From Auanema rhodensis (lineage: Eukaryota > Animalia > Nematoda): a DNA stretch of 64,000 bases. Shown here in pieces: positions 4,628 to 60,351 of this stretch; position 1 is the first letter of the stretch; each line of letters starts with the position of its first letter. Where the stretch lies: NCBI GenBank assembly GCA_964057225.1, contig OZ059896.1:17608001-17672000 (forward strand). Reading direction: 5' to 3'. A model generated the notes under the pieces. It saw nothing but the letters and a program-made list of their open reading frames with translations. It searched no databases and was not told the DNA's origin. The translations under genes and the position numbers were made by a program.

Positions 4628-7600
4628 TTATAGGCATCCAACGGGGACGCGAAGCTTTTGGACAAGGTATTCATCTAATCTATCGAGCATAGACTTTGGA
4701 AGATATCCCTTGCGAGACATTTTTCTGAACATATCAGCCTTGGTATCAGACTTAGATACACACTTGAAGACGGTGTTAACTTCAGTGGTCTTTGAAGCTC
4801 CATTAGAACACTTAAGGATTGGCTTGTCAGAGAAACACATACGGCTGTTCTCCTCGATGACGTGAGTGGAATTTTTGTGCTAAACGTTAGTAGAATAAGA
4901 AATCATAAATGAATGTAATATAAGAGCTTACTAGATCCAAGCTCGAACTTGTCCTTTGGCATCTCCTCAACAATTTCTTCCATTCCCATGTATTCGTAGT
5001 TCTCTTTCTTGCTTAAAACCATATCTTGGTTCTTGCACTCCTCGATCAAGTAGCTACGGTGGAACTCTTCGATGTTCTCAGTGTCTTCGTTGTCAGCACG
5101 ACGAAGATCGTTAGACTCCTGAAATAAATATGATAAAACTACTGCAAAATACTTTAAATGCTACATCGTTGTCGTAGTGTCCGCACATTCCGCATTGCTT
5201 GTTCTTGAAGAGTGGAGACATCTTGATCTTGGTCTCGTATCCGTTGAAGATAACGGTCAAGTATGGAAGTTCGATCTCGTAGGTCTTTTCAGACTTCAAA
5301 TAGATGTGATACTTCTCCATGGTCTTTACGTTGCTGATGATTTCGTTGTTAACCTTGACGTACATCTTTCCGGTAGAACGCTTCTCAAGCTCATAAATGT
5401 TCTTTCCAGACACGACTTGGATGGTTAATTCCTCGCTCTTATCCTCAGTCTTTTTAGCGAGAACCAAGAATTTGGGCTTTTCAGTCTCAGAGCAGTCTTT
5501 GGCAACAATGGAATAACAAGTGGTTAATGGAGCACGGTAGACAACACGGTCGAAGGTCTTCACCTTTGATTCAGAGACCTTGCACTCGGCGCGGACTACA
5601 TTTTCCATCTTGTTAATGACGTGCTTGACGTTGTGAACTGGTCCATAATGAGTTTGAATGTTGAGAACTGGAAGACGGTATGGCATACGCATCTTGTTAA
5701 AAGTAACTTCTTCATCATCCTTTCTGATGGTCAAGTTGCAGTATTGACGGTCTACTGGCTCAATAGTGAGATAGACAGCGAGGCGGTGCTCCTTCAACTC
5801 AGTATCAATAGTCTTGTAGTCAACATCCATCCAGTTGTAGATTCTAAGGATAGTCATGATATTGTCAATACGCTCCTCGAGGGCACGATCAAGATGGTAG
5901 CTAGCAACAAGGTTGTATTGGTCGAGACGGCCGGCTTCAGAGAGAATTTCATAAAGCTTCCAGCTGTTCTCAGCCTTCTTAAGGTTGTTCTTCTCAAAAT
6001 CGGAATTCTTCATCAGGTCGCTGAACCACTCACGTTGTTCCTTGCTGTGCTCTCCGTGGAGTTTAAGGTTAACGAAGTATTTCTCGTCAGATCCCCAGTT
6101 GACTTGAAGGAAACTAACGACATCACGGTGAAGTTGTTTCTTCAACTCTTCCAAGCTCCAGGAGAACTTGGGGTAGAGAGTTTGAGCGACGGCGCGAAGC
6201 TTCCAGTCAGAGGTTTCAGTCTTCAATGGAATGCGATCTGCCTCAACGGACCAACGGCAATAACGCATGTGCTCGTCACAGGTGGTTTCGACCAAGAATT
6301 CGGCCATCTTGGCTTCTGGGGACTCAGAAGATTCAAGATGCATCTTGATGAAGTGCTTGTAAGCCTTTTCGATGTTCAATTCCTTGTAATACTTGTTGAA
6401 GTGCTCTAACTCTTCCTCGTTCTTGTCTTCACCCTTGTAGAAGTCTTCGAAGTGAGGGTTGAGCATGTTTTCGACTACCTCGAAAAGCTTAGTTCTCATC
6501 TGAACAGTGTATTCACGTGGCATAACGGTCTTAACGAAGTCAAGATCGAACTTGTGGTTGGCAAAGAAGGTATAGATTGGGTGGTAGTTGTAGGTATTAC
6601 GCTCAACTGGCAAGTTGAATTCTCCCTTAACCTCAACGTCAAGTCCGGTGTTCTTGAAGTAGTTGCGGACGTAGTTGATCTTGTTCCACAATCCAAGGTT
6701 GTTCTTGAGTGTGATCTCTTCTGGCTCAGGATAGTGCTTAATTCCAGACTTCCAGACTCCCATGAAAGTGTATGGGTGTGAGCGGATTTGGACAAGCTTT
6801 TGAGAGGATTCGAAGGTCTTCCAGATATTGCGAAGAATGACCTCTCCGTTCTCCCAGGATCCAATAGTTCTCAAGTTAATTGGGAAGTTGACAAAGAGAT
6901 GTTGGTTGACTCTGAGTCCGTGTTGAACAAGACGAGTGTTGAAGGAAACCTCAACTTGGTGGGCAAGGGTGACGATTGGTTCAGCTTGAAGATGAAGGTT
7001 GAATCCAGTCCATTTCTTGCTATCAACAGGAGTGAGCTCGAGCTTAGCCTGTCCCTTAGCGGAGAAAACTACTGGGAGACGAGCTGTAAACAAGCATGGA
7101 AGTCCATTGTAGGCAGGTTTCTTAACAGCCAACTCATAAACATAGAAGACAGAGTTGAAATTGAATGGAAGGTTTTGAGCGAACATCTCTTCGATGGATC
7201 CGATCATGATTTTTCCATCTTGAATGAGGTTCTTGATGGTCTCTGGCACGTTTTCCAAGTCAAGAGGAACGAAAGCGAAGTCCAAATCACGGAAACGGAA
7301 GTAGATGACAGCGCGGGAATCGTTCTTGTTAACGGTACGACGGGTGATTCCAACCTTCTGAATGAGGCTGCGGATGTACTCGACTGGGTTGATTCTGATC
7401 TCTCTCTTTCCACGGACAATAAGGTTTTCCATGGAGATCTTCTCGTGCATCTCGAAGAACTTCTGGAGAAGAAGATCAACGTTGTGTTGGGTAATTCCGA
7501 AGTCAAGAAGGCTATTTTGCCATTCAGATCCGAATACTCCTTCAAGACTGGCGCGGACTTCTTCAGGGAGAAGGCTGGAGTTAGTGAAGATGGAGTCAAG

Positions 7601-9821
7601 CTTTAATCCAAGTCCGGCTTCCCAGAGGTTATCGTACATGGTCCACTTGTTTTGTTGAGAAAGCATAATCTTTTCGGTTTCTGGGTAAAGAATTTCGAGT
7701 TGGCGAACACGTTGAGCAAACTTGCGCTCGTGAACAAGCTTAGACTCAGCAATAGCCTTCAAACTGCTGCGAACGTAGGTGTGCATTTGACGGCTACGCT
7801 CGGTTGTCAAGCGCTTGATAACTTGGAGAATGAGGGACTCGGATGGCTCAGTGCGGAGAATTTGAGCCCAAGCGGCCATGCGAACTTCTTGAACTTCGGT
7901 TTGATCAAGAACAACAGAGAGAAGAATCTTCTGGATCTTCAAAGGCATGCGAAGACGGCGGAGAGCATAGATAGATTCGACACGGGCTTCAGATTGGTGT
8001 TGACGGTTCATGATGTACTTCTCAAGAGCATGAACGGAGATGTCGATTCCAGCGTTGGCAATGGTCTTAAGAAGAAGGACCTTCTCATAGCGGTCAGAAG
8101 CGCTGTTAAGCTTGTTGAAAAGCTTCTCAATAAGTTTCATTTTAAGTTCACGGTTGCAGATTGGCATGGAGTTCTTAGGGTTGTTGTACCAGTTGATTCT
8201 TTCAACCTTCTGTCCACAGAATCCGTTAAGGAGAGCTCCATAAGTAAGCCAGCAGGATTGGCGAACAACATTGTTACGTTGAGCTTGGGAGCTCTCGCAG
8301 AAGTTGTAGATATCCTCAGAGATATGTTCAGAAGATCTGGGGACTTGAGTGAGAGTCTTAAGAACTTGAACAGTCTTGGCGGCGGTAATTTGGTTCTTGT
8401 AGAACTTCTGGAGAAGGTGACGAATGGTTGAACGGGATCCAGCAATAGCAAGAGCATCAGTGAAGTAATCACGGACCTTCTCTTGTTCGCGCTCGCTCAA
8501 TTTGGTGAAGAGCTCAGATTTGAACCAGACCTTTTCGATTTGACGAATTTCAGTCTCAGATGACCAACGAAGAACTTGAACGAAACGAACAAAGCAGTTG
8601 GCAAACTCAGGCTTGTCAATGTGCTCAACTAATTTCTTAAGAACACTGAAGACAACATCTACACGGTTCTCGAAGCTAACGATCTCACGTTGATACTTCT
8701 CTTCACCAGTCATCATGAATTTCTCCTCAGCGATTTCGCTAGCCATGTTGTAGATGACATCCTCCTTTCGGACTTGTCCAACCAACTTGTAGTCCTTTCT
8801 GATAGGCTCTTCCTTGATGAGCACAAGCTTGTTCATGGTCTCAGCGGTGAAGAGTGGCTCAGCAGACTCAACGAAAGATTGGAACATCTGACGTCCAGTG
8901 AACATATTTTTGACAGGGATCCATTGACGCTTATCACTGTCCATTCCAAGGGTAAGTTTGTGGTGAACATAGTCGGTGCTATCCTTCTTGAGAAGGTCAG
9001 TAAATCCAGAATACAATTCTGGGACGTAGCTGCAGTTGTCGAAGTTGACGTACTTGATGTATTCGAGTTCAGTCTTGTTCTCGAAGTTCAAAACGTACTT
9101 GACGTCACATTGACCGTAGAACATGCGCTAGAAATATCACGCTTGAAATAGAAACTCGAAAGATAACTCATACCTCGTGAGCAACAAACTCCTTGTAGTC
9201 AGAAACTTCACTCAAAACTTCATCGTCATTTTTGAACAAATCGACTCTCTTCTTGTTGAGATTGACCTATTCATGAGTTTATATCAGAATACGGTTTTAA
9301 AGAACTAACCTGGAGCATATCAACGATGCTCTTTTTGATGTTCATGGACCACATGTCATCCTTGGTCAAGAACTCGATCTCGTTGACCAAACCATTCTTG
9401 TAGTTAACACGGAAAGGAAGAGTCAAGAATTCCTTGAGCTCCTGCAACACAAAAAGAAAATTCATAAAATCATAAAAAAATGAAAAGAAAGCAATAAAAA
9501 ACTTTAAATTAAACTTACAGCAGAATAACTGTCTTGGTCAACGGTTTCTCTGACAATCTTTCCATTTTCAATGTTGTTAACAAGAATATTCTTAGCCTCG
9601 ACGTAGAGCCATTCGTTGTCCTTAGTAGGAGTAACAATGATATCAGCAGCCAAATTAGCGTAGCTACGAGAATCAGAAGAGAGTGGAGTTCTTGAAGTCA
9701 TCTTAGACTCATATCTGTATGTATATTGACGTCCATTGGCAAATCCAAAGTTCTCATTAGAGATTGGGATTGAAGCCAGAGCTAGACTCGCGAGGAGTCC
9801 GACGGCAACCAGAAGCCTCAT
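4628..9821 (-). CDS. vit-6: Vitellogenin (yolk lipoprotein precursor), vit-6-like, ~1640 aa, 6 exons: 9821-9519, 9441-9310, 9266-9174, 9127-5165, 5118-4932, 4879-4628
   Basis: Signal peptide MRLLVAVGLLASLALA; Vitellogenin_N-like start (FANGRQYTYRYES); 1337-aa ORF with KTIANAG; RGKR convertase-type site; VWD domain (VKTFDRVVY...CYSIVAKDCS...QCGMCGHYD); Cys-containing tail (MCFSDKPILKC...VPVGCL*). Introns are short and GT-AG. The last junction has a one-base phase mismatch (see findings). The vit-6 subtype is inferred from recall of the C. elegans protein. Confidence 0.93.
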
Positions 9822-13688: not shown

Positions 13689-14972
13689 CTAAATATAAAT
13701 AAATTAAATTCTTATACAATATTTATGTCATTTTTCATATATTATATTTAATAATTTTAAAATAAAATGTTTACTGAATTGGAAATTTTCATTTTTTTTC
13801 ATTTTATGATAGGAACATCGTTACATGTAACTCAAAGCATCTTATCGATAATTTGATAAGAAAAACACATGCAGATCAGCTAGTTACATGCTTTAAGCAA
13901 TTTGATTGAACATTTTGAAATAGAATAATGGATATGAAGATAAAAATTTTCATGAACCATACTTCAATGAAACAATGAAATTTACCTTTTTCCAAAAATC
14001 ACTTTATCTTTCATTGAGATTTTCTTTTGTTATCTGAATATGTTTAGTAGAAAGATAAACGAAACAGTCTCAAAAAAGCTCAAAATATCAAGTTGAATGA
14101 GAAAAGTTTGAACATCTTTGCTTTAGATCAATCAAGCAGCGGATTACACATTGTGGAAATGTTGTTGAAGATTGGTAAATATATTGAAAGAAACAACCAA
14201 AAAATTTCTGTCAAAAGGTGTCAGAAGGACAATCTTGAATTGAGAGAGGACGAAAGAAAAAGAGAAAATGAGGGATAAAAGATTTTGGGTTTAATGGCAA
14301 GATGTCACGTCAAAAGGTAAGATATGTTGAGTTCAGAAATGAAAAAGATGTCACAAGATTCGCTTTCTTTCTGACCTCTCTATCCTTTTCTCAAACTTAA
14401 TGGATGAGTTCAGTCCAAAGCTTTTTCCAATCTTCAATTTTTGTTCATCTTTAAGTAAATGAAGATCAGACAAAAGAGAAAAGGTTAATGAAATACGATT
14501 CTTGATAATAGAACTGTCTGTAGGCTGTATGTGTGTGCATGTGTATTGGAGTATCTTGTATCTTCTAACAGAATCCCCCCAATTCTCCATTACTATTTTC
14601 TTATGAACAATATCAAAAAGCATATATATTTCAACAAAGCTCATGATGTAACCCTTTATGTTCAAGTATAATCAATAGTATAACAATTAAGTCTTCAATA
14701 ACAAACAGTTCAACGATTTTAAAGATGAAAAAACTTCATTGTTGATACTACCGCAGAAGCATTTCTATATTACGTAGCTTCTTATTCAGACATACCCAAT
14801 AGAACAACTTTCTCAGGATATTTTCATAAAAGCCATACAATCACAATATGTTTTGATAATAATATCCTGTCTGTGATAGTATGAATGTAAAGAAGAATAA
14901 GGACGGGAGGAGATATTACAGAGATCACTAAATAGATATGTGAAAAGAAAAAAAAGAGAAATAGATTGAAAG

Positions 14973-14975
<3 letters not shown>

Positions 14976-15033
<58 letters not shown>

Positions 15034-15098
15034 CGAGAAAGATAGAGAGAGTAAGAGAGAGAAAGAGAGAGAGAGAGAGATAGAGAGATAGAGAGAGA
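14976..15098. repeat. (AG)n microsatellite, poly-G and degenerate AG tract
   Basis: Direct inspection. Confidence 0.9.
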
Positions 15099-15568
15099 GC
15101 TGCAGTAGAAATAGAGATAGGTAAATGAAAAAAAGAATAAGTCAACTAAAATATAATTATGTATATTCGAGTGAAATAACTGAGTTTCACGAACTACATA
15201 CACAAGTACAATACGTGATGATTGTAAAGAAATGAAATAAGAAAACAGATTTTTCATAAATTTTTGTATTTCAATCCAGAATTATATGATATAATCTTTG
15301 GCTTAATATGAATATTTAATAAGATCTATAGATATGTATTTAAGTATATCTAAACATTAGGAAACATTACATTATTAAAAAAAATTATATACATATATAT
15401 CATTATCTGTTATACATATATAAATATAAATATAAATACATACATACATATTCATATTAATCTATATTTAATGAAATATTCAGATTATTACTTATAATAG
15501 AATACATAGAACTATTTTATTATTAATTTAATATAGTAAGTAGTGGCTTCTTCTTCATGCTATATGCT

Positions 15569-20291: not shown

Positions 20292-20294
<3 letters not shown>

Positions 20295-20342
<48 letters not shown>
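20295..20342. repeat. (TC)n microsatellite
   Basis: Pure TC run. Confidence 0.95.
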
Positions 20343-20345
<3 letters not shown>

Positions 20346-21111
20346 TTCTTTTTACAAGAAAAAAATTAAATGGCATTAGCTTGAGAAGATAGTTTCGTTA
20401 TATGAAAGTTGGGGCAGATATAGAAGAACTGATGAAGATGGGAGGCGACAAGGCTAAATGAAATAAAGAGACGGGCAACATAGGAAAGCTTAAAAGTTGA
20501 AACAATTAAGAAAAGTATTATATGTACGAACATATACTAGTTAAGAAAAATGTTTTGATGATGAAATACAATATCATGTTGAAATATTTGAATACAAGAT
20601 AACTATATATGTATAATTAGACAAATAATTAGCAATTATCTTTGAAATTTACATTACTAGAGACATATATATATATATATATATAGATATAGATATATAT
20701 ATTAATAAGTTATTTTGAATATTCTAATATATAATTTTACATGTTATAGTCCAATTAACGAATAATCTTAATTCAACTACTTATATCATAAACCATGACA
20801 TCATCATGACATGACAAATGCTACGAAATCATTTTGCTTGTATCTTTGATCAAATTTACATAACCTTTTTTCATTTATATACTACTTTGTACAATTTTAA
20901 ATAAGTTATGTAACATATAGATTTTATATTTTATATTTCTTCAAAACCTTTATACTATTTTACTACTTGTTTCTCTGTTTTCATTTGTTCCCTTACAGTA
21001 TGAATGCGGGTTATAAGTAAGGTATAGAGAGTTCAAACAACTTAGTACAAAAGTATTTCCGATTAAATGATTTTTATAATATTTTATCTTTTTCTCTCTC
21101 CCTCTCTCACC

Positions 21112-21666
21112 TGTACCAGTGTTTCTCAATGTGTTTATTCATATAAAAAAATATTTTCTAATAATTATTAAAGAAAAATATTAATTTAGTACTATATTTC
21201 TAATAAAATATTATAAAATAGAATAAACATAATCTTAAAACGATACGATTTGCGATCAAAAAATCGAAGTTCAAGCTCCGCCCCATCCTGGTTTTATTAT
21301 ATAAAACGGACAGTTTGCTTTTAATCGCTTCAAAACCCCGAGTTTTCGGAACTCTTTCTATATTCTTTCTTCAAAAATCATTTGAACAACATGCACCAAG
21401 GAGTTGCCCGTCTAAATAAGCGGAAGGTGACCTTCTGTGAAAATTCTGAAAATCAAACAAAACGAAAGGAGCGAGCACCAAAGTTTTATGGTGAGTCCAT
21501 CTATCTATCTTTCCCTCTCTCTTTCTCTCTATTTCTTCCAATTACTTATTTGAATTTACTTTTCAGAACCTTTTCGGCCACGTCAGTTACAAGCTTTGTC
21601 TTCCTTTGATTTAACCCTTGAAACTGTGTTTGAGGAAGAATTTTCTGAAAAAAATGAGAATTCATC
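21112..21666 (+). repeat. Left arm of a 555-bp inverted repeat
   Basis: Reverse complement of 25462-26016. Coordinate sums at both ends equal 47128 (no net indel), and ORFs 21382..21609(+) and 25519..25746(-) translate identically. Confidence 0.97.
21276..21306 (+). promoter_or_regulatory. GC box (CTCCGCCCC) plus TATA box (TATATAAAA) upstream of microprotein copy A
   Basis: CTCCGCCCC at 21276-21284 and TATATAAAA at 21298-21306, ~85 nt before the ATG; typical Pol II core promoter spacing. Confidence 0.6.
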
Positions 21667-21676
21667 CAATGCTTAG
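21391..21676 (+). CDS. Putative 69-aa two-exon microprotein, copy A (exons 21391-21490, 21567-21676), with RVxF- and LxxIxE-type motifs
   Basis: aacaacATG start, G|GTGAGT donor, pyrimidine-rich 76-nt intron, TTTTCAG acceptor; the frame stays open after splicing: MHQGVARLNKRKVTFCENSENQTKRKERAPKFYEPFRPRQLQALSSFDLTLETVFEEEFSEKNENSSNA*. GC box and TATA lie upstream. Confidence 0.65.
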
Positions 21677-22304
21677 TTAGAATTTGTAACTAAATAGCAA
21701 AAGGTATTGTCTTTGTAGCCTTTAACAAATAAGAAAACATATTTCTTGCTTTAGAAGTCGGTTAAACAATTTTTTTTGTTGTTGCTTCATGATTTCAACA
21801 TGTTGTTGCTGCTGCTACTGCTGGCTAAAGGAAGTATTTATCAGAAATACAAAGCCTATGGAAGTGCCAAAAACACGAAAGACACATCATTCTCTTTGCT
21901 CATTTCTTATACGTATATATATCTATATATATATATGTGTGTATGTTAAGTACATATAATTCTATTGTCATTTCCTTCATCTCATTATGTGTAGTGTTAT
22001 TGCTGAGCTTGTCCTGGCAAAATCGAAAGAATGTGTATTCTATGAATTACATATAGAAAATCAGTGAAAAAAATCGAAAAAATGCATTTTCACCCCCCAC
22101 TGATCATCATATTTGGGACATATATTTTGAAATAAAGACATCATATCTCACGTATTTTATGAATGTTAGTCATCATTTTTGTATAATTGAAACCAGTTTG
22201 TACATATATAGTTTGAAATATCTATGAAAAGATTATAAACCTTCAAATAATTTTTTTACTGTGTAAAAGAGCAAAACAAAGGGTAGAAAGAGAAAGAGAG
22301 AGAA

Positions 22305-22359
<55 letters not shown>

Positions 22360-25300
22360 GAGAAATGATGATAATGATGATGATAAAACCGTATGCTAAT
22401 AAACAAAAAGAAGCAAAAATATGAATATATAATACATAAATCTGATGCTTGCAAGAATATTTTTAAAGAAATAACAACACAAAATAGTATAAGATACTGT
22501 TGAATTGAATAATTAAGTAAATTAAAAGAGCTAATACTCCAATAAACCATATCATTATCATTATTAATTTTTAATTTTAATCATTTCTAAGAACTTGTAC
22601 AATATCTATCGACAATTATTCATAAATCTTCTGGAGTTCTTACAATTACAAGATTTTTTGAATAATATTTACAATATATAGATATAATATAGTATTTATA
22701 TAGTTTATATCATATAACTAATCAATTAAAATATATGTAAATAATTTTCATTTTTCGTTTAAAGTATGACTATGACTATGAGAGTAGTTGAATGAATATG
22801 TAATGTTGACATTTATGTTCAAATGTCCAGTTAAAAGTTGTATGAACTTATACAACATTTTATCTTTAATTTTTCAACTTTCATCAATATTACATACAAA
22901 ATATTTTAAAAATTAAAGGTAATGTTAATTAAATGAAAGAAATGAATTGAAATAAAATGTTGTTAAAATCAAAATTGATACGTAGTTAATTACATATGTA
23001 TGTTTATAAGTATTTATTATTATTATATTATATTTAATTTCTTTCTAAATATATACTATATGTATTATATATTTATATAATATTTATTCAAATTATAAAT
23101 ATATTATATAGTTTAAAACGTAAACTGGTAAATAATTGTTATAAAACGTTTCATATATATACTTATAATATTATATTAATACATATTGTTTATTGAATAA
23201 ATATATGAAATATATATTTTTTGTTGTATATAAATTATATTTACTATTATTATATAAAAGATGAAAATTAAAATATTGTAATATAATGGATTATTTATCA
23301 ACATATTCAATATTTATGTTTCAAAATATGATATAAAAGGACAATTTATATCAATATTTGAAATTTCAAACTTCTGAACTTTATGAAATCTGATGAAATA
23401 CTAGTGTGAACAGAAGCGAATGACCAACAAACAAATACATTATACAAGTTTTTTCCAAAATATTATAGAATATTTTCCAGAATATAAATATTTTTTTCAT
23501 CATCATCATCATATAATAATACTTACTTTTGCTATTAACAGATTATTATTCTTTAAAAATCATTCTAATGTATGAGAAAGAAATGCCAAAGTAAACAGAA
23601 GACGAGGAAATTCTGCTACCAAAAAAATTCTCTACCATGTTGACTTGTGTCTTCTGTACTTTTGACAGTTTTTTTAATATTTTCATCCCTTACGTATTAT
23701 CTTCGTCATTATTTCAAATGATAACTAAATATTTATCAATATTTGAAACAAATAGATAGTTAACTAGTATAGTACCTTCATTGAAAATACATTCAATTTT
23801 ATACTTTTAACAACAAAAAAATTATTTTGAATCAGTAAAGTATTATATTATTAGTAAAATAATAATAATAAACTTTTTTTTTCGGCTGACGTGGGTATAG
23901 TAGGTTAGTAGAGTGTATGAGAAACGTAATGAAAAGGTAGAGACACAGTAGTACAGGTATGAACGAGGGATGTTACGATAAAACAAAAAACCTGCAACAA
24001 GAAATAATAAACTTATTTTTTCTGTTAGTTGATGGAAAGAGAGAACAGAGAGGGGGAATACCGGTAATTTGGGTAATATATCAAGATTAAGTTCATCTGG
24101 TTTTTTAATCACGAAATGTTACACATTTGATCATATTAATGTGTGTATTTCGGAACTTTTGTAAATACTGGCTACCTACTTACATAGTGCTGCTAAGGTC
24201 GCGTTTGTTGCTGCTATAGCAGCTGATGCTGTTCACAAAAATTGGATATTAATCTTCTGAACTTAGTGGCCAAATATAAGAAAAAATGTATTTAACTGTT
24301 CGAACTCTATTTTAGAAAAAGAAGGAATAAGTAAACGAAATAAACTTTGGAATTCATACACTCTGATCGCTAGGCTGTTGCTCTTTTACAATTTTCTTGC
24401 AAACGGGGAGAAAAAGAAAAAGAGCAAATAAACGAATACAAAATACAGTGTGACATAATTGTATGGGAAAAAAATTGTTAAGAGCGGACTTTAATAAATT
24501 TTATTTTCTCTCTTTCCTTAAAACCTTTTTACACTATGTCTCCATTTTTTAATTATCTACCTTTTTTTCTCTCTCTCCCCTCCCCTCTCTCTCTGTATCA
24601 CTCTCTTTCAATGAGAATTCAAAGCCCATTCATTTGTGACTATCAAAATTCTCTTCCTCAGCCGTTTAAACGTTATATTTTTGCTCTCTCTTCTCCTTCT
24701 CTCGCACTCTTCTATGCATCTCTTTACATTTCGTCATTTGAAATCATTTTATGTCATTTTTTTCAATCAGCTATCCCCTCACATTCTGATCTTTGAAATA
24801 ACCGTACAACGAGACTTTAAAGTTTGAACCAATTTTGCGCTAAAACTAGATGGTCAGTTTAATTTTCATTATATGTATGTATGTCAAATGATACCAGTAA
24901 AACATTTTGAAAAGAGTAAGATGCGCTCAAACGGAAAATTGTAAAAAATTGACAAACGAAAAATATTACTGATTGGTTCCACTTGTCATCTTGATACTTT
25001 TACAAGGAACTATAGCAACCTTGCAACTTTTTCGGCAACAAAAGCACGAAACTTCAAAAATGTTACATGAAATTGAAGGAAAAGAAACAGACGATACTCG
25101 AAAAAATATATGTATGTATATATATCTGCATGATATGTATCTGCTATTTCATAGGAAAAATCAAGGTACACACAGTATAGACAAAGAGTTTACTTAAAAA
25201 TATTGAATACAATAAGCAATAGCGTGTTAGACTTCTGTTGTTCATACAGAATGTTGAATTGTGAAACTGATGATTCTTAGGCTTCCCGAAAAGACTGTCG

Positions 25301-25457
25301 ACGGAATGATGTTCGCATGAAATTACTCATTCTTTTCTTCCCTTCAGAAGCTTCTTTGAGAACTTATGACAAAAGACGCAAGTTTTCTACAAAAAAGACA
25401 CAAAATAAATGAAAAATTGTTGAGAAAACAAACCAAAATGCTCTAGCTGACTCCTCA

Positions 25458-25737
25458 CTAAGATGAATTCTCATTTTTTTCAGAAAATTCTTCCTCAAAC
25501 ACAGTTTCAAGGGTTAAATCAAAGGAAGACAAAGCTTGTAACTGACGTGGCCGAAAAGGTTCTGAAAAGTAAATTCAAATAAGTAATTGGAAGAAATAGA
25601 GAGAAAGAGAGAGGGAAAGATAGATAGATGGACTCACCATAAAACTTTGGTGCTCGCTCCTTTCGTTTTGTTTGATTTTCAGAATTTTCACAGAAGGTCA
25701 CCTTCCGCTTATTTAGACGGGCAACTCCTTGGTGCAT
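25458..25737 (-). CDS. Putative 67-aa two-exon microprotein, copy B (exons 25737-25638, 25561-25458)
   Basis: Same as copy A except that it ends ...EKNENSS* with TAG at 25460-25458, just outside the repeat arm. Confidence 0.65.
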
Positions 25738-26016
25738 GTTGTTCAAATGATTTTTGAAGAAAGAATATAGAAAGAGTTCCGAAAACTCGGGGTTTTGAAG
25801 CGATTAAAAGCAAACTGTCCGTTTTATATAATAAAACCAGGATGGGGCGGAGCTTGAACTTCGATTTTTTGATCGCAAATCGTATCGTTTTAAGATTATG
25901 TTTATTCTATTTTATAATATTTTATTAGAAATATAGTACTAAATTAATATTTTTCTTTAATAATTATTAGAAAATATTTTTTTATATGAATAAACACATT
26001 GAGAAACACTGGTACA
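25462..26016 (-). repeat. Right arm of a 555-bp inverted repeat
   Basis: Reverse complement of 21112-21666; the spacer between the arms is 3795 bp. Confidence 0.97.
25822..25852 (-). promoter_or_regulatory. GC box plus TATA box upstream of microprotein copy B
   Basis: Mirror copy of 21276-21306 within the inverted repeat. Confidence 0.6.
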
Positions 26017-29887: not shown

Positions 29888-38805
<8,918 letters not shown>

Positions 38806-44859: not shown

Positions 44860-47495
44860 ATGAGCTCTGAATGTTCTCGAATGATATTAAGTAATTGGTT
44901 GCTTCGCGAAAAATTCTCATAAACTTTCAGGAAAAGAATTAATTTTTTTAGATTGTAAAAGTCAATAAAACATGGTATATGGCTGTGTATCATGTACTCA
45001 AATCGGTTTGCATTTCCCTTCAATCTTGTCGACGCTTCGTTCAACTTTTTTTTGTCTGATTGCTTGTTCAGGCATTTTCTATACTTTTCTTCTTTCGCTT
45101 CGGCTTATACAGAGAAATTCAGAAAAAAACTTAGAAATTTCTAGTAATCAAGAAATTAGGTTTAGCTAGAATTCATGTAAATTTATAAATATAAATATAT
45201 TATATATTATAGACCAAAAAAATAGAGAGGACGCTCGAAAAGAATATATGAGATCATTGTTTGGGCTTTTCATGAAATGTTAGAAGAAGTTTTTTGATTT
45301 ATAAGGAAATTTTCAGAACAGCTACTAGTGATTTTCTCACAGTTGTTCATATAAAACAGTCTCACACATTAATTATTTTTGTTTATTCATGATTATAAAG
45401 GAATGATGATGAAGTAATGAGAGATATTCATATATGCACATGCATGTACGGCTTATGTAGGTGTAGTAAAGATGATATTCGTGAAACAACGATGGAATAA
45501 TGAAAAAAGAAAAAAAGGCTAACATGAGTTGAAATGGAGACAAAGACATACATGCATCCAACCATTTTCTGAACCAGATGAAAGGCATAGCAAAGTCCTT
45601 CCCACAAGATCTATAGGATTAATTTGCAGAATAAGAATAATAACAACAAAAAGTTTTTTCTTCGTTGATGCGACCTGTTGTGAATACTGGACGAGTTAAT
45701 CAATTAGATATCTTAAGAGACTACTTAATGGGAATTAGCATTCCGAATCGAAAAAAAACCGTTGACGTCAATCTTAAAATTTGCCTTCAAAGTTCCTGGT
45801 ATTCGCCAACATTGTGGTCTCGAACTGAACAAAACGAATTGCTTTTCGTTATGTTTGTACTTAGCGCACAAATTCTGAAGCAGTAATCGTTCTAGGAAGC
45901 ACGATGAGTCGTCGTCGTTCTGCATGTTGTCGCAGCCGTTGTCCATTGCGGATAACACAACAACGACGATACTTTTCAATTCTTTAACAAGCTGCCGGTC
46001 CTAACACGAATTATGAGGGTTCATGAAGACAACCTCCGCTTCGGCAACCTCTGTTTTTTTAAGTATTCGACAAAGTTTTTTTCCGGCATTGTGGATGAAT
46101 TATGTGTGTTCAATTTTATTTTAATGAGCAGTTTCAGAAACAAAATCATTGAACAAACTTTCAAGTATAGCGAAGCTATTTTAATTGATAGTTAAGCATA
46201 AATTAGTGAAGTATCAATAAATAATTAAAGTTTGAACAGAATATCAGAATTCTGCACTAAAACCTCGCTTGAAGAGGTGCAATTGTGCTGCGTCGGCAAT
46301 GTAGTTGGGAAGAATGAACAGCGCGAGGATAACGCTAGCCGAAAAGGCGGTCAGAATGAGGTAAATGGAAAAGAAGAAGTTTTGAAGCTTTGAGACTGAT
46401 TGGAAATTGGATAAATTCAGACGAAAAGTCGAAGAAAGAAAAAGGGAAGATGGAGCAATGGAAAAAGAGAAGACGAGAGAAGGGAGAGAAAGGGGGACAA
46501 AACGTAAAAGAGTGAATATTGCTAGAGAAATGTGAGAAATAGACGAGGAAGATTAGGAAAGGAACAGAAGCATAGCGGGAAAGATGAGGATGGAAAGAGG
46601 ATCAGGTGGATAAAGAGGGAGCCAGATGAAGAGAAAAAAGAGAGAGGGAACGACAGAGAGAAAGAGAAAGAGTAAGTGAGAGAAGGAATTTATTTTTCTA
46701 AATAAAGGGATGAAATTTATGATACAAATAGCAGAAAATGACAAGATAACCGTTCATCAAAGTTACATGCACATGTAAATGAATAATACATATTATATTC
46801 ACGTATTTTTGGCGGGAAATATACTATATGAGACAAAAACTAGAAGATAAATGAAATAATAGTAAAGATAAAGGTAATAATAGATTTGTGAGCAGTTTGC
46901 CATTCTTATTCCCTTTCTTCACCTTTCAATACATTTCTTTATTCCCATATCTCATCTTTTTTTTTGAATTACAAACTCTTTGTTGCATATGATACTTGGA
47001 TAAGAATCATATAATTTATAAAAAAATACAAAACTGATTGAAGAATTATTAGTTCTTGAGGAAGATCAATCTGGATATGAAATTGTTACGCTCAAATCGC
47101 TGTATGAACAGCATGGCTCGGAGTCTTTTTCAGCATAAGTTTCTGTGCAATGTTGTGAAGTAAAATGTATGAAAGTAGTTGTTTTTACGAAGTGAATCAT
47201 ATATAATTATAGAATGACTATGAAACTGAAAATGTGATCCAGATGACTTTCCATTTAGAATCAATTATTTATATGAACCATGCACAAACTACTAGCTTCT
47301 ATTGGTCTCACTGAGAGAAAACGAAGTTGATTTTAGCCACATATGGAAATCAACAGATGAAATTTCAGAGGGTCTAGTGAGGAACATAGTGAAAATGAGA
47401 GGAACAGAATGATAGGGAGTTGGAAAGAAAAAATGGGAGAGAGAGAAATAGTAAGAGAAGTTGACGAAGAAAAAAAATGAAACAAAGAGAGGGGA

Positions 47496-47497
<2 letters not shown>

Positions 47498-47537
<40 letters not shown>
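47498..47537. repeat. (AG)n microsatellite
   Basis: Pure AG run. Confidence 0.9.
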
Positions 47538-47539
<2 letters not shown>

Positions 47540-48733
47540 CAAAAGAAAAAGAGCACGAGGAGATAGGGAAAGTTCTTTGGAGCAGAGCATGCTCCATCAT
47601 CAGGGTGGCCGACGTTAGAACGACGAAGTTGGCTGCAGCCGGAAAAGCCAACGAGCCTCTGACGTCATAAGAGGATGTAGATGGCTAAGGACGCAGAGAA
47701 TAGAGAAGTAGCATATGAAGGAAAAAGAAGAAAATGAAAGAGCAAGGAGGGTCTACGACAAAGATGTCGGAGCCTGAAGAAAACGAGGCCGAAGAATGAG
47801 AAGAAGAGCAGAAGAAGGACGGAAGACATGATGGACCAATCCTTGCCATAAACGTTTAGTGAAGTACTCAAACTGGCTATTGGCCAGTTGTGTGTAAAGA
47901 AAATTAATCGTATTTGTAGGTAAAACAATAGAAAACGACAAAAATAACGTTTTTGAATGAAGAAGGTTTCAAAGTAAGATGTGAAGAGCTATTTTTCTGA
48001 TTTGTCTTTACAAATATTTCGAGAAAAAGAATAAATAGTATAGTTAACATATAGTTATCTCAGCAATAGTATATTTGAAATTCCTAGAAATCTTTATATG
48101 TGTATGCAACTATGATGAATGAAAATCGATCAAAAAATGGATATTTTTCAAAAAAAACATATCTAACTCATTCATCTCAATTTGTGCTTACAAACATATG
48201 TTCAGGCTTCCATTTTGATTTTTAAATATATTTTTTACGTTTTAAATTTATTTAGCTTCGAAATTTCATAATCTGATTAAATATATTCATCATATATTCA
48301 AAGAATTTTTGATTATATATATAAATATATATTTAAAGGTAAATGTTAATCGGAGAAAAAGAGCCTGAACGTGCTCTGGAGCTCTGTCTGATTCTTGGAG
48401 CAAGGATGGAGTTGGCCGAGCTACTGCGTGGGGCCTTTACGCGGCTCTCACCATCTCCTTTCTTTCTCTTTCTCTCTATCTCCAACTTTCATACGCTGTC
48501 TGACATTTGTTCCGTTTCTTGTTCCATTGCTGCCTCAACATAATGTGCTAGTGAGGGAGGCAAGCTTTTTCCTTTTTCTCCCTCAATTTTCTCTGGCTCC
48601 TCGCCTTCCCTCATTTCTCGTTTCAGTATGTAGTTCTATTTCTCTGCTATGCTTTCTTTCTTTGCCTTTGTGCTAGCAACATCCATACTATTTTCTGAAA
48701 ACTTACTATATGTGTACATCTCTCTCTCTTTCA

Positions 48734-58100: not shown

Positions 58101-58667
58101 CTCGTCCGATTACATTACTTCAGAAAAGGATAAAAAAGGAAATATTATACAACTAGATTGGATGTGCGAATGCGTGTACGTATATGTGTATAGAGCTGTG
58201 ACAAGATTTTCGGGAGAAAGAAGGAGAGGGGGTATTGTGGGAGGAGGCCAGTAGTTGCATGCTTGCAAGGGCATATGCTGGAGTACGGCATTCAGAGATC
58301 TCTTCGAGAACTAGAAGTTAACTTAGTAAATGACCAAAAAACTGATTATCGTTAGCAGCTCAACGTATTTGCTTGACTAATATAAAATAATAAAATAAAC
58401 TAAAAAGTTTTAAAAATTGAATAATAATAATAATTCAGAAGCCCATTAACAAGTGTAGACTGATGGCCTGTGAAATTTAACTCAACCGAATCATGTGATT
58501 TTTCCATTTTTTCCATTTTTTCTATAACAATGGAGAAATGGGAAAAAATTATAAAAATGCTGCAGTTTTGATAGTATGATTCAGTTATTGACATATATTG
58601 ACAAATGGTTTTGAACATCCCTGTTGTGAGAATGACCTTCAATAGAGATTTTGAAGAGAAATTATAA

Positions 58668-58680
58668 GAGAGAGAGAGAT

Positions 58681-58759
<79 letters not shown>

Positions 58760-58800
58760 AAGAGAGAGAAAGAGAGAGAAAGAGAAAGAAAGAGAGAGGG
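58668..58800. repeat. (AG)n microsatellite grading into (AGAGAGAGAA)n
   Basis: About 60 nt pure AG, then 10-nt units. Confidence 0.92.
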
Positions 58801-60351
58801 AGAGTGAAATACAGAGAAAATTTGCAATAGATGAAATGAGAGAAGCTTGATGTAGATTGAGCTTTAAAGAGAGAGATAACGACGAGTACATCAAATCGAA
58901 TGAGAGGGCATCAAAGATAGGAAGAAAAAAACAAAAAACTGTGTGAAGTGAAGAAAGCATTGAGGGTGGAAAGAGAGAAATAGAGGTGTGAAAGAGAGAG
59001 AGAGAGAGAGGTGCGTAGGTAGAAGTATGAAAAGAAAGAAAGAAAAAGAGAGGAAAAGACAGAGAGAAAAAGAGCAAAAGATTGTGAAGGAAGGAACTTG
59101 ACGATTGTATTTCTCCGCTTAAAAACTAAACTGGTATGCTTCAAATGCTCCATGTTAGTTGTTAAAATTGAAAATATTCATATTTTTGTTAAAAAAAAAC
59201 TTTTTTCTCTGAAAATTCTGCTAAACCTATTCGAAAATGGATACATTACTTCCATGAAAGGAAACACATCGAAACGTGCAGCAAGCCGTGAGAGCAGACA
59301 ATTGGTTAATGGCTTTGAATTTCCACTGGTCTCTTCGGCTTTCAGAAAGGATATTAGGTTTGCCACAGGCAGAAATTCAATGGTTTCAGGGGCAAAAAAG
59401 TCAGAAAGCGACGAGAAGAAAAATATTTCAAGTTGGTAAGTTGATAATTTTTTAAAAAAAAGTTAGAAAGTTATCTGAGAGGGGAGGAGTATGTGAAAGA
59501 GAAATTGAAGATATTTTTAAAAAGTGTTATCCTTTACCTCCTGTCTTGCTTTTTCTTGTCAGATGCGCTTGGAGAGCCGATCGAAGAACAAGATGGATTA
59601 AAGCTGACGATTCATTTAAGAAATTAAGAGAAAAAGAAAATTCTAGCTCTTTTTTCTGCTCGACACTCCGAAACAGAATTAAAGTTGGAAAAAGCGGTTT
59701 TAACTTTAGAAATATGCTCAGAAATGGGTGTGTATTTTAGACAAAATTAAAACTAAAATTATTTCAAATTTTAATATTTCAAAATAGATAAAAAAAAGGT
59801 AAAAATAAAATATTTAAAGTTGAGAAATGAACTGGAATAATTGGTCAGTTGTGATTCGGTCGAATGGTTTGCCAACAGAAATATGAAGCGAGTGAGGTTT
59901 CATAAAGAGAGACCTACAGAGAAGGAGATAGACATTGTGAAGAAAAGGATAACGAAGAGCTGAAAGAGAGAAAACCAGAAGATTGGAGAAAGGAGAAGAG
60001 AGGGAGCAGTGAAAAGGACAGATATAAATTGAGATATTGGGAAAGAGAAATGCAACAACAACGAGAGTTGGATTGAAAGCCCATGAAGAAAATTTATCTA
60101 TTTAGTTGTTATGAGACAATAACTCTTACGTTTTATTTTTAATTTTATGTTTATAGGATAAGGATTAAATCAAAATCAGGTATAATGGTTCAAGGTGGTG
60201 GAACACTGTCGAAGCACAATGAAAGGAGAAATGTAAGACAAGACTGATCTGAATGAAAAGCTCAACAAGAGATGATTGTGATAGAAAAAATAGAGAGAAG
60301 GAGACGTAGATAGACAGAAAGAAAGAAAGAGAGAGAAAGAGAGAGAAAGGT

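What the first reader, a model, noticed from the sequence alone, without database searches (positions are those of the whole stretch)
21112..26016. 555-bp inverted repeat that duplicates one whole micro-gene, arranged convergently
Seen: the two arms look identical by eye and span ~165 bp upstream of the GC box through to the last codons. Both copies point inward across a 3.8-kb spacer with no transposase or other recognisable ORF. Even the intron and AT-rich upstream DNA match. The termini read TGT...ACA (or TA|CCAGTG...CACTGG|TA), but the outer flanks (CACC vs CGAG) show no non-palindromic target-site duplication. Inference, alternatives: (a) palindromic gene pair kept identical by arm-to-arm conversion; (b) very recent inverted duplication; (c) non-autonomous long-TIR DNA transposon whose TIR carries a gene. 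Convergent or read-through transcription could make long dsRNA and endo-siRNAs that regulate the gene, and recombination between arms could flip the spacer.
Basis: partly seen in the sequence, partly recalled or inferred. Interest (0 to 1): 0.75.

Follow-up and report, generated by a model that had tools for sequence, protein, structure and literature searches.

The report
Young inverted duplication of tiny gene
A 555-base stretch of unique nematode DNA carrying a candidate 69-codon gene occurs twice, as exact mirror-image copies 3.8 kb apart. It looks like a very recent scar of chromosome-break repair, a kind of duplication already well known in worms and flies, not a jumping gene.

Summary
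Arms 21112-21666 and 25462-26016 are 555/555 complementary, tail-to-tail around a 3,795-bp spacer.

- **Copy number:** the arm, its terminal 27-mer and both exon peptides occur nowhere else in the 181-Mb nematode genome. Spacer and flanks are unique apart from microsatellites.
- **No transposon features:** no non-palindromic target-site duplication (a 2-bp TA cannot be excluded), no terminal inverted repeat within an arm, no transposase. Reading (c) is not supported.
- **Arm edges:** homology stops dead at all four, with no microhomology.
- **Not quite a whole gene:** the inner breakpoint lies 8 nt before the stop codon. Copy A ends ...SSNA*, copy B ...SS*, and the 3' UTR is not duplicated.
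- **The gene is unproven:** TATA-like box, no upstream ATG, canonical GTGAGT...TTTTCAG intron and the best codon score of six frames, but that score is weak and no homologue was found.
- **Local context:** the surrounding 264 kb holds two more inverted duplications (99.7% and 98.1% identical).

Best reading: a young inverted segmental duplication made by break repair (staggered-break micro-inversion or template switch). Arm-to-arm conversion is a possible helper.

The scan has already noted similar gene-bearing mirror duplicates elsewhere in this genome (s1-420664, s1-420234). This is an ordinary kind, of low to moderate interest. Read support, sister-species synteny and expression could not be tested.

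The parts
21112..21666 (+). Left arm of the inverted repeat (copy A): AT-rich upstream DNA, promoter-like region, exon 1, intron and most of exon 2
   Evidence: 555/555 identical to the reverse complement of 25462-26016. Only these two copies exist in the genome.
25462..26016 (-). Right arm of the inverted repeat (copy B), mirror image of copy A (position x in A corresponds to 47128 - x)
21667..25461 (.). 3,795-bp AT-rich unique spacer. No recognisable gene. Holds a (GA)n tract at about 22285-22366 and a CT-rich tract at about 24556-24600.
   Evidence: Single-copy in the genome except the GA microsatellite. The ten longest ORFs gave no Pfam match above threshold. No Rfam family. No internal inverted homology.
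21278..21309 (+). Promoter-like elements of copy A: CCGCCCC box and TATATAAAA about 85 nt upstream of the ATG. No upstream ATG lies between them and the ATG.
   Evidence: Read directly from the sequence. Function not tested.
21391..21490 (+). Copy A putative exon 1 (33 codons plus 1 nt; MHQGVARLNKRKVTF...KFY). Contains an RVxF-type KVTF motif.
   Evidence: First ATG of the open frame, followed by a G|GTGAGT donor.
21491..21566 (+). Copy A putative intron, 76 nt, GTGAGT...TTTTCAG, CT-rich
   Evidence: Sequence reading. Typical nematode splice signals. Not confirmed by RNA.
21567..21676 (+). Copy A putative exon 2, ending ...NENSSNA then TAG at 21674-21676. The last 10 nt lie outside the repeat.
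   Evidence: translate
25638..25737 (-). Copy B putative exon 1, identical to that of copy A
   Evidence: translate
25458..25561 (-). Copy B putative exon 2, ending ...NENSS then TAG at 25458-25460. The stop comes from spacer DNA just beyond the arm end.
   Evidence: translate
21087..21111 (+). CT-rich polypyrimidine tract directly abutting the outer edge of the left arm. A possible fragile or fork-stalling site.
   Evidence: Sequence. Any role in the breakpoint is inference only.

Best explanation
This is a single, evolutionarily young inverted segmental duplication. A 555-bp piece of unique DNA was copied in reverse orientation 3.8 kb away while a chromosome break was repaired. The piece holds a promoter-like region and all but the last two codons of a candidate two-exon, 69-codon gene. 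Two routes give exactly this A-spacer-A' layout. One is a micro-inversion of the 3.8-kb segment in which one breakpoint was a 555-nt staggered break that was filled in. The other is a replication template switch onto the opposite strand and back. The arms are identical mainly because too little time has passed: under about 1 million generations at a C. elegans-like mutation rate. Arm-to-arm gene conversion may help. SHOWN: perfect identity, copy number of two, unique flanks and spacer, sharp blunt homology edges, no transposon hallmarks, different C-termini of the two ORF copies. INFERRED: the repair mechanism, the age, which copy is the parent, and that the ORF is a real expressed gene.
For: 555/555 identity. 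The arm and both exon peptides are found only at these two places in 181 Mb. The terminal 27-mer is unique at up to 3 mismatches. Spacer and flanks are single-copy apart from microsatellites. Homology drops to background at all four edges: the outer-flank alignment scores 23, against real AT-rich controls of mean 21.6, sd 7.7. No N or gap occurs in the surrounding 264 kb of a 23.6-Mb contig. Two other inverted duplications lie within 60 kb, at 99.74% and 98.1% identity, so such events recur here and then diverge. At their divergence levels a 555-bp arm would show zero differences with P from 0.53 down to 0.0006. Published precedent: newborn C. elegans duplicates are often adjacent and inverted, with a median span of 1.4 kb (PMC2728529). 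The hsp16 modules form an inverted repeat (PMC3966223). Staggered-break inversions leave inverted duplications of unique sequence, median 321 bp and up to 1.9 kb, often at only one breakpoint (PMC1885836).
Against: No reads were available, so the assembly at this spot is unverified. No sister species is within reach (best vitellogenin relative 31-33% identical), so neither the age, the ancestral spacer orientation nor the parent copy could be determined. Perfect identity is equally expected from ongoing conversion. No microhomology was seen at the junctions, which fits end-joining better than microhomology-driven template switching.
Confidence: 0.68

Rival explanations
1. An old palindromic gene pair whose arms are kept identical by frequent arm-to-arm gene conversion, as in Y-chromosome palindromes or the C. 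elegans hsp16 locus. The perfect identity would then say nothing about age.
For: 100% identity across intron, AT-rich upstream DNA, A7 runs and a CT-rich tract, all expected to mutate fast. In both neighbouring palindromes the mismatches cluster at the outer arm ends (7 of 12 in the outer 613 of 4,990 columns, P = 2e-4; 21 of 33 in the outer 177 of 2,463, P = 1e-16). This pattern is compatible with conversion homogenising the inner parts. Conversion between close inverted paralogues is documented in Caenorhabditis (PMC3966223).
Against: No decayed homology lies beyond the arm edges. The neighbouring palindromes with longer arms and shorter spacers are not perfectly identical, so conversion here is not overwhelming. 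555-bp arms across 3.8 kb are a modest conversion substrate. The outer-edge clustering in the neighbours may instead reflect older dispersed repeats or tRNA arrays at those edges.
Confidence: 0.17
2. An assembly artefact: a chimeric or fold-back read or mis-join created a false second, inverted copy.
For: Perfect identity is what an artefact would give, and no reads were available to check. An earlier follow-up note elsewhere in this genome reported that reads did not confirm one fold-back junction inside a satellite array (s1-384034, unchecked).
Against: The copy is internal to a 23.6-Mb contig with no N within 264 kb. It is separated from its partner by 3.8 kb of unique sequence, not folded back directly. 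The junctions lie in unique DNA. A 4.9-kb structure is easily spanned by long reads. Comparable but imperfect palindromes lie nearby, and imperfect ones are not what artefacts produce.
Confidence: 0.07
3. A non-autonomous long-TIR DNA transposon (Tc3/Tc7- or foldback-like) with 555-bp terminal inverted repeats that happen to carry a small gene, inserted at a TA.
For: The layout is TIR-spacer-TIR. The ends can be read TA|CCAGTG...CACTGG|TA, loosely recalling the CAGTG ends and TA target of Tc1/mariner elements (resemblance from memory; sequence).
Against: Arms, terminal 27-mer (up to 3 mismatches) and spacer all have copy number one. The spacer holds no transposase or other Pfam domain. The identity runs 2 nt beyond the TA, so the TA is not a clean boundary. 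There is no non-palindromic target-site duplication.
Confidence: 0.03
4. A functional hairpin-RNA or invertible locus. Read-through from one copy across the spacer would give an RNA with a 555-bp perfect stem that is diced into endo-siRNAs regulating the micro-gene; or recombination between the arms would flip the spacer as a switch.
For: Only the geometry: convergent identical copies, and neither 3' flank has a canonical AATAAA.
Against: No expression or small-RNA data. No conservation is testable. The structure is fully explained as a neutral repair scar, and such scars are common in this genome.
Confidence: 0.05

Closest known systems
Newborn adjacent inverted gene duplicates of Caenorhabditis elegans (Katju & Lynch data set as summarised in PMC2728529), and the hsp16 inverted repeat (Russnak & Candido 1985, cited in PMC3966223)
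   Same: A short duplication span of the order of one gene. The copies are close together on one chromosome in opposite orientation. Divergence is zero or near zero. One copy gains a unique 3' end because the breakpoint falls inside the ORF, the 'structural heterogeneity despite zero divergence' of those studies. The host is a nematode.
   Different: The arms here are shorter (555 bp, against a 1.4-kb median and 1.9 kb for hsp16). The spacer is longer than at hsp16 (3.8 kb against 416 bp). The orientation is tail-to-tail. The duplicated 'gene' is an unverified orphan micro-ORF, not a known gene family.
Inversion-associated inverted duplications from staggered breaks (Ranz et al. 2007, PMC1885836)
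   Same: Inverted duplicates of ancestrally unique, often genic sequence flank a unique segment. The size is within the reported range (46 bp to 1.9 kb, median 321 bp). The duplication often occurs at only one breakpoint. No repeats or transposons lie at the junctions, which are blunt as in end-joining.
   Different: Those inversions are kilobases to megabases long and were polarised with outgroups. Here the would-be inversion is only about 4 kb and its ancestral orientation cannot be tested. Those duplicates average 88% identity; here it is 100%.
Conversion-maintained palindromes (human and ape Y-chromosome amplicons; Rozen et al. 2003, cited in PMC3966223)
   Same: Gene-bearing inverted arms with near-perfect identity around a unique spacer.
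   Different: Y palindromes have arms of 9 kb to 1.45 Mb and carry multi-copy testis genes. Their age was proved by presence in sister species. None of this is shown here.
Long-TIR Tc1/mariner-type elements (Tc3, Tc7) and foldback elements of nematodes
   Same: Overall TIR-spacer-TIR geometry. A possible TA at each end.
   Different: Single copy, no transposase, and termini shared with nothing else in the genome.

Membership tests
Young inverted segmental (gene) duplication | Two copies of one sequence, opposite orientation, same chromosome, close together | tested here: met
   Arms 21112-21666 (+) and 25462-26016 (-), 3,795 nt apart
Young inverted segmental (gene) duplication | The duplicated sequence is otherwise unique (copy number exactly two) | tested here: met
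   DNA, peptide and pattern searches of the whole 181-Mb assembly find only the two arms
Young inverted segmental (gene) duplication | Near-zero divergence, with sharp homology end points set by the breakpoints | tested here: met
   0 differences in 555 nt. Flanks beyond all four edges align no better than unrelated AT-rich DNA.
Young inverted segmental (gene) duplication | Derived state: second copy absent in close relatives or strains | not testable with these tools
   No close relative in the collections (best vitellogenin hit 31-33% identity). Metagenome scan blank.
Young inverted segmental (gene) duplication | The duplicated unit is a real, expressed gene | tested here: inconclusive
   Plausible TATA box, ATG, GTGAGT...TTTTCAG intron and stop. 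The proposed frame scores best of six in both exons, but only 0.065 bit per codon against 0.72 for real genes, and 2.2% of stop-free intergenic stretches do as well. No Pfam, word-search, PDB or Atlas relative.
TIR DNA transposon (Tc1/mariner-like, long-TIR or foldback) | Several dispersed copies, or related elements sharing the termini | tested here: not met
   Copy number one for arm pair, termini and spacer
TIR DNA transposon (Tc1/mariner-like, long-TIR or foldback) | Target-site duplication flanking the element | tested here: inconclusive
   No non-palindromic duplication (flanks CACC / CGAG). A TA/TA reading is possible, but the inverted identity runs 2 nt beyond it.
TIR DNA transposon (Tc1/mariner-like, long-TIR or foldback) | Transposase gene or remnant inside, or an autonomous partner in the genome | tested here: not met
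   The ten longest spacer ORFs gave no Pfam match above threshold. The spacer has no relatives elsewhere in the genome.
Conversion-maintained palindrome | Arm-to-arm identity much higher than the age of the structure predicts (orthologous palindrome in a sister species) | not testable with these tools
   No sister genome available
Inversion with staggered-break duplication | Inverted duplicates of unique sequence at the ends of a unique segment, with no repeats at the junctions | tested here: met
Inversion with staggered-break duplication | The segment between the duplicates is inverted relative to the ancestral order | not testable with these tools
   Needs an outgroup or population data
Hairpin-RNA / endo-siRNA locus | Both arms transcribed on one RNA, and small RNAs mapping to the arms | not testable with these tools
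PP1-docking (RVxF) / B56-docking (LxxIxE) short-motif protein | Presence of the docking motifs in the predicted peptide | tested here: met
   R-K-V-T-F in exon 1 and L-E-T-V-F-E followed by EE in exon 2. This is a pattern match only, such motifs arise by chance, and binding was not tested.

The most novel reading that the evidence does not exclude
The pair is not a neutral scar but a self-regulating module. It would be a conversion-maintained convergent palindrome in which read-through across the 3.8-kb spacer makes a 555-bp hairpin RNA. The resulting siRNAs would throttle an orphan phosphatase-docking microprotein (RVxF plus LxxIxE motifs) encoded by both arms. Alternatively, arm-to-arm recombination flips the spacer as a switch.
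Probability: 0.05. Interest if true: 0.6.

Novelty: new member of a known kind. Interest (0 to 1): 0.25.

Why it matters
By itself it matters little. It is one more example of the short, adjacent, inverted duplications that dominate newborn duplicates in nematodes, and of the inverted duplications that break repair leaves in flies.

It has three modest uses:
- It catches such an event at zero divergence with all four junctions intact and blunt. That makes it a clean specimen for working out the mechanism, should reads or related strains become available.
- It shows at birth how a breakpoint inside an ORF gives the two copies different C-termini and 3' ends.
- Together with two neighbouring palindromes at 99.7% and 98.1% identity, it suggests that this chromosome region makes inverted duplications repeatedly. 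That could be quantified genome-wide.

If the micro-ORF proves to be a real phosphatase-docking microprotein, its immediate doubling would be a small case study in orphan-gene birth and dosage.

Tried and rejected
1. **Transposon reading.** I searched the whole genome with the arm, the spacer, both flanks and the terminal 27-mer at up to 3 mismatches. Only the locus itself and microsatellites came back. The ten longest spacer ORFs had no Pfam domain. Rejected.
2. **DIRS-like or LTR element reading.** This was prompted by the TG...CA-like ends and inverted repeats. There is no internal coding capacity, the copy number is one, and the arm does not end in CA. Rejected from the sequence itself.
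3. **Non-coding RNA gene in the arm.** Rfam at E up to 1 gave only a sub-threshold snoR13 hit (30.6 bits against a gathering score of 60) straddling the arm end. There are no tRNAs. Rejected.
4. **Decayed homology beyond the arms, as a sign of an old palindrome.** A roughly collinear 257-nt, 59%-identity alignment of the outer flanks turned out no better than unrelated AT-rich DNA. Not accepted as evidence.
5. **Microhomology or indel-shifted homology at the junctions.** Only a 5-nt TTAGT match offset by 6 nt was seen, which is compatible with chance (reading).
6. **Homologues of the micro-protein.** Each exon was searched separately by reference. All came back blank: Pfam (only a sub-threshold 'Tantalus' hit, E 0.044), word search, PDB, Atlas and own-genome paralogues.
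7. **Steps not taken on the micro-protein.** The large profile search (search of protein representatives) was not run. A 33-40-residue piece would need about 70% identity to be significant in 1.8 billion sequences, and the nearest species in the databases is far more distant, so a blank would have meant nothing.
8. **Sister-species synteny.** The best vitellogenin relatives are only 31-33% identical, so there is no usable close genome.
9. **Independent contigs.** An exact 33-mer from exon 1 was not found in the metagenome contigs.
Full report
**1. Observation**

The window is AT-rich eukaryotic DNA (33% G+C overall, 28% between 10 and 30 kb). It comes from a 181-Mb, 112-contig assembly, at C4:17,608,001-17,672,000 of a 23.6-Mb contig.
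- Its genes and splice signals are those of a nematode. A vitellogenin gene lies on the minus strand at 5111-9821 (Pfam Vitellogenin_N, open beta-sheet, VWD).
- The best relatives of that vitellogenin are nematode VIT-6 proteins at only 31-33% identity.
- Earlier notes of the scan also call the genome a nematode.

The repeat finder gives one outstanding inverted repeat: 21112-21666 against 25462-26016, 555 nt, 100% complementary, 3,795 nt apart.
- A direct string comparison confirms 555/555. The very next base differs on both sides.
- It is the only inverted repeat in the window that is not microsatellite.

**2. What is duplicated**

Each arm holds the following:
- about 165 nt of very AT-rich DNA;
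- a CCGCCCC box and a TATATAAAA box;
- about 85 nt without any ATG, then an ATG (21391 in copy A);
- 33 codons, a G|GTGAGT donor, a 76-nt CT-rich intron ending TTTTCAG, and a second exon.

Translation by reference gives exon 1 as MHQGVARLNKRKVTFCENSENQTKRKERAPKFY in both copies. Exon 2 reads PFRPRQLQALSSFDLTLETVFEEEFSEKNENSS, followed by NA* in copy A and by * in copy B.

The repeat therefore ends 8 nt before copy A's stop codon.
- The copies have different last codons, stops and 3' flanks.
- Neither 3' flank has a canonical AATAAA.

**3. Is the micro-gene real?**

The evidence is suggestive but weak.
- In both exons the proposed frame has the best codon log-likelihood of the six frames.
- The value is only 0.065 bit per codon, against 0.72 for the window's real genes. 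About 2.2% of stop-free intergenic stretches do as well.
- G+C rises to 38-42% over the promoter and exons, against 8-22% just upstream.
- Pfam gave nothing above threshold.
- The word search with either exon found nothing. The PDB and the Atlas were also blank.
- There is no paralogue elsewhere in the genome.
- Rfam and ARAGORN find no RNA gene.

The peptide matches an RVxF-type pattern (RKVTF) and an LxxIxE-type pattern (LETVFE followed by EE). Another first-stage note says the same (s1-421170). These are short patterns that arise by chance, and I did not test binding.

The joined, spliced protein was never assembled, searched or folded. The big profile search was not run, because 33-40-residue pieces have almost no power against 1.8 billion sequences when the nearest species in the databases is this distant.

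**4. Not a mobile element**

- A DNA search of the whole assembly with the arm returns only the two arms, plus a 42-nt CT-rich match.
- The terminal 27-mer has no other match at up to 3 mismatches.
- The spacer matches only itself, apart from its (GA)n tract. The flanks match only themselves and AT/CT microsatellites.
- The ten longest spacer ORFs have no transposase or other domain.
- The flanks (…CACC | arm … arm | CGAG…) carry no direct duplication. A TA/TA reading is possible, but the inverted identity runs 2 nt past it.
- An arm has no terminal inverted repeat of its own.

A single-copy structure with no transposase and no relatives is not an ordinary TIR element.

**5. Edges and junctions**

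Beyond all four edges the two sides align no better than unrelated AT-rich DNA. The best outer-flank local score is 23, against 21.6 +/- 7.7 for real controls and up to 24 in shuffles. I saw no microhomology at either novel junction (reading). A CT-rich polypyrimidine tract abuts the outer edge of the left arm. Such tracts are everywhere in this genome, so I treat any role as a break site as inference only.

**6. Context**

I joined 100 kb on each side to the window (264 kb, no N). Upstream lie two more inverted duplications.
- One has 4,990-bp arms at 99.74% identity around a 1.7-kb spacer.
- The other has 2,463-bp arms at 98.1% around a 1.9-kb spacer, with tandem tRNA-Gly(GCC) genes in both arms. 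This second one is the palindrome of note s1-420234.

Inverted duplications therefore arise repeatedly here and then diverge. In both neighbours the mismatches cluster at the outer arm ends (P = 2e-4 and 1e-16). That is compatible with conversion acting on the inner parts, or with older repeats at those edges.

For the 555-bp arms, zero differences puts a 95% upper bound of 0.54% on divergence. That is about 1.0-1.35 million generations at 2-2.7e-9 per site per generation, a C. elegans-like rate taken from my own knowledge.

Earlier notes of the scan describe many fold-back or inverted duplications in this genome. One is another exact mirror pair of a small gene, judged ordinary (s1-420664). 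I use these notes as leads only.

**7. Mechanism**

Every reading starts with one inverted duplication of 555 bp of unique DNA. Two repair routes give exactly A-spacer-A'.
- **Staggered-break micro-inversion.** The roughly 4-kb segment inverts, and one breakpoint consists of two single-strand nicks 555 nt apart. Fill-in and end-joining then leave the sequence between the nicks at both ends, in opposite orientation. Ranz et al. (PMC1885836) proposed this for 17 of 29 Drosophila inversions. They report duplications of 46 bp to 1.9 kb (median 321 bp), often at only one breakpoint.
- **Replication template switch** to the opposite strand and back.

The blunt junctions without microhomology favour the end-joining route slightly. 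The two routes differ in whether the spacer is inverted relative to the ancestor, which needs an outgroup.

[quoted passage not shown] Their median span is 1.4 kb, and the copies often have unique exon ends despite zero divergence (PMC2728529). The hsp16 modules form an inverted repeat subject to conversion (PMC3966223). The present case fits that known kind.

**8. Verdict**

| Reading | Probability |
|---|---|
| Real-looking, young inverted segmental duplication of a candidate orphan micro-gene, made by break repair | about 0.68 |
| Old palindrome kept identical by conversion | about 0.17 |
| Assembly artefact | about 0.07 |
| Functional hairpin-RNA or invertible module | about 0.05 |
| Transposon | about 0.03 |

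The hairpin-RNA and spacer-flip ideas are geometrically possible but have no evidence. This is a new member of a known kind. Interest is low to moderate, mainly as a clean zero-divergence specimen with intact junctions. Nothing here called for a referred step.

Noticed in passing
L032:9941 to L033:4929 and L033:6633 to L034:1622 (G000:C4:17,557,941-17,562,929 and 17,564,633-17,569,622; 38-50 kb upstream of the window): A large palindrome: 4,990-bp inverted arms, 99.74% identical, 1.7-kb spacer. Seven of its 12 mismatches lie in the outermost 613 columns (P = 2e-4). This suggests either conversion of the inner parts or a composite origin.
   Followed up: partly
L035:8411 to L036:858 and L036:2772-5233 (G000:C4:17,586,411-17,588,858 and 17,590,772-17,593,233): An inverted duplication with 2,463-bp arms, 98.1% identical, 1.9-kb spacer. 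Each arm carries tandem tRNA-Gly(GCC) genes spaced 381 bp apart. Mismatches are strongly clustered at the outer end. This is the palindrome of note s1-420234.
   Followed up: partly
window 5111-9821 (-): A vitellogenin (VIT-6-like) gene with a single 1,337-codon exon. Its best relatives in 5.8 billion proteins are only 31-33% identical (strongylids, Oscheius, Pristionchus, Toxocara). This species therefore has no close relative, and no proteome of its own, in the collection.
   Followed up: partly
window, many sites (e.g. 2404-2530, 14950-15100, 20292-20353, 22285-22366, 47470-47540, 58650-58810): Long (GA)n/(CT)n and (AT)n microsatellites recur every few kb, and hundreds of near-identical GA tracts exist genome-wide. 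One CT-rich tract directly abuts the left arm's outer junction.
   Followed up: no
window 25300-25412 (+): In the spacer, just inside the right arm, a good acceptor (tcccttcag|AAGC) opens a short frame ending ...KKTQNK*, with an AATAAA overlapping the stop. This could be the last exon of an unannotated plus-strand gene. If real, it would mean the right arm landed next to another gene's 3' end.
   Followed up: no
window about 29,888-37,700 (-): Exons of a plasma-membrane Ca2+-ATPase-like P-type pump. The identification rests on reading the ORF translations, plus a sub-threshold Pfam haloacid-dehalogenase match on one exon (19.5 bits against a cut-off of 26.4). A Ser/Pro-rich last coding exon lies at 29888-30253. 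The palindrome lies about 3.9 kb downstream of this gene's stop codon.
   Followed up: no
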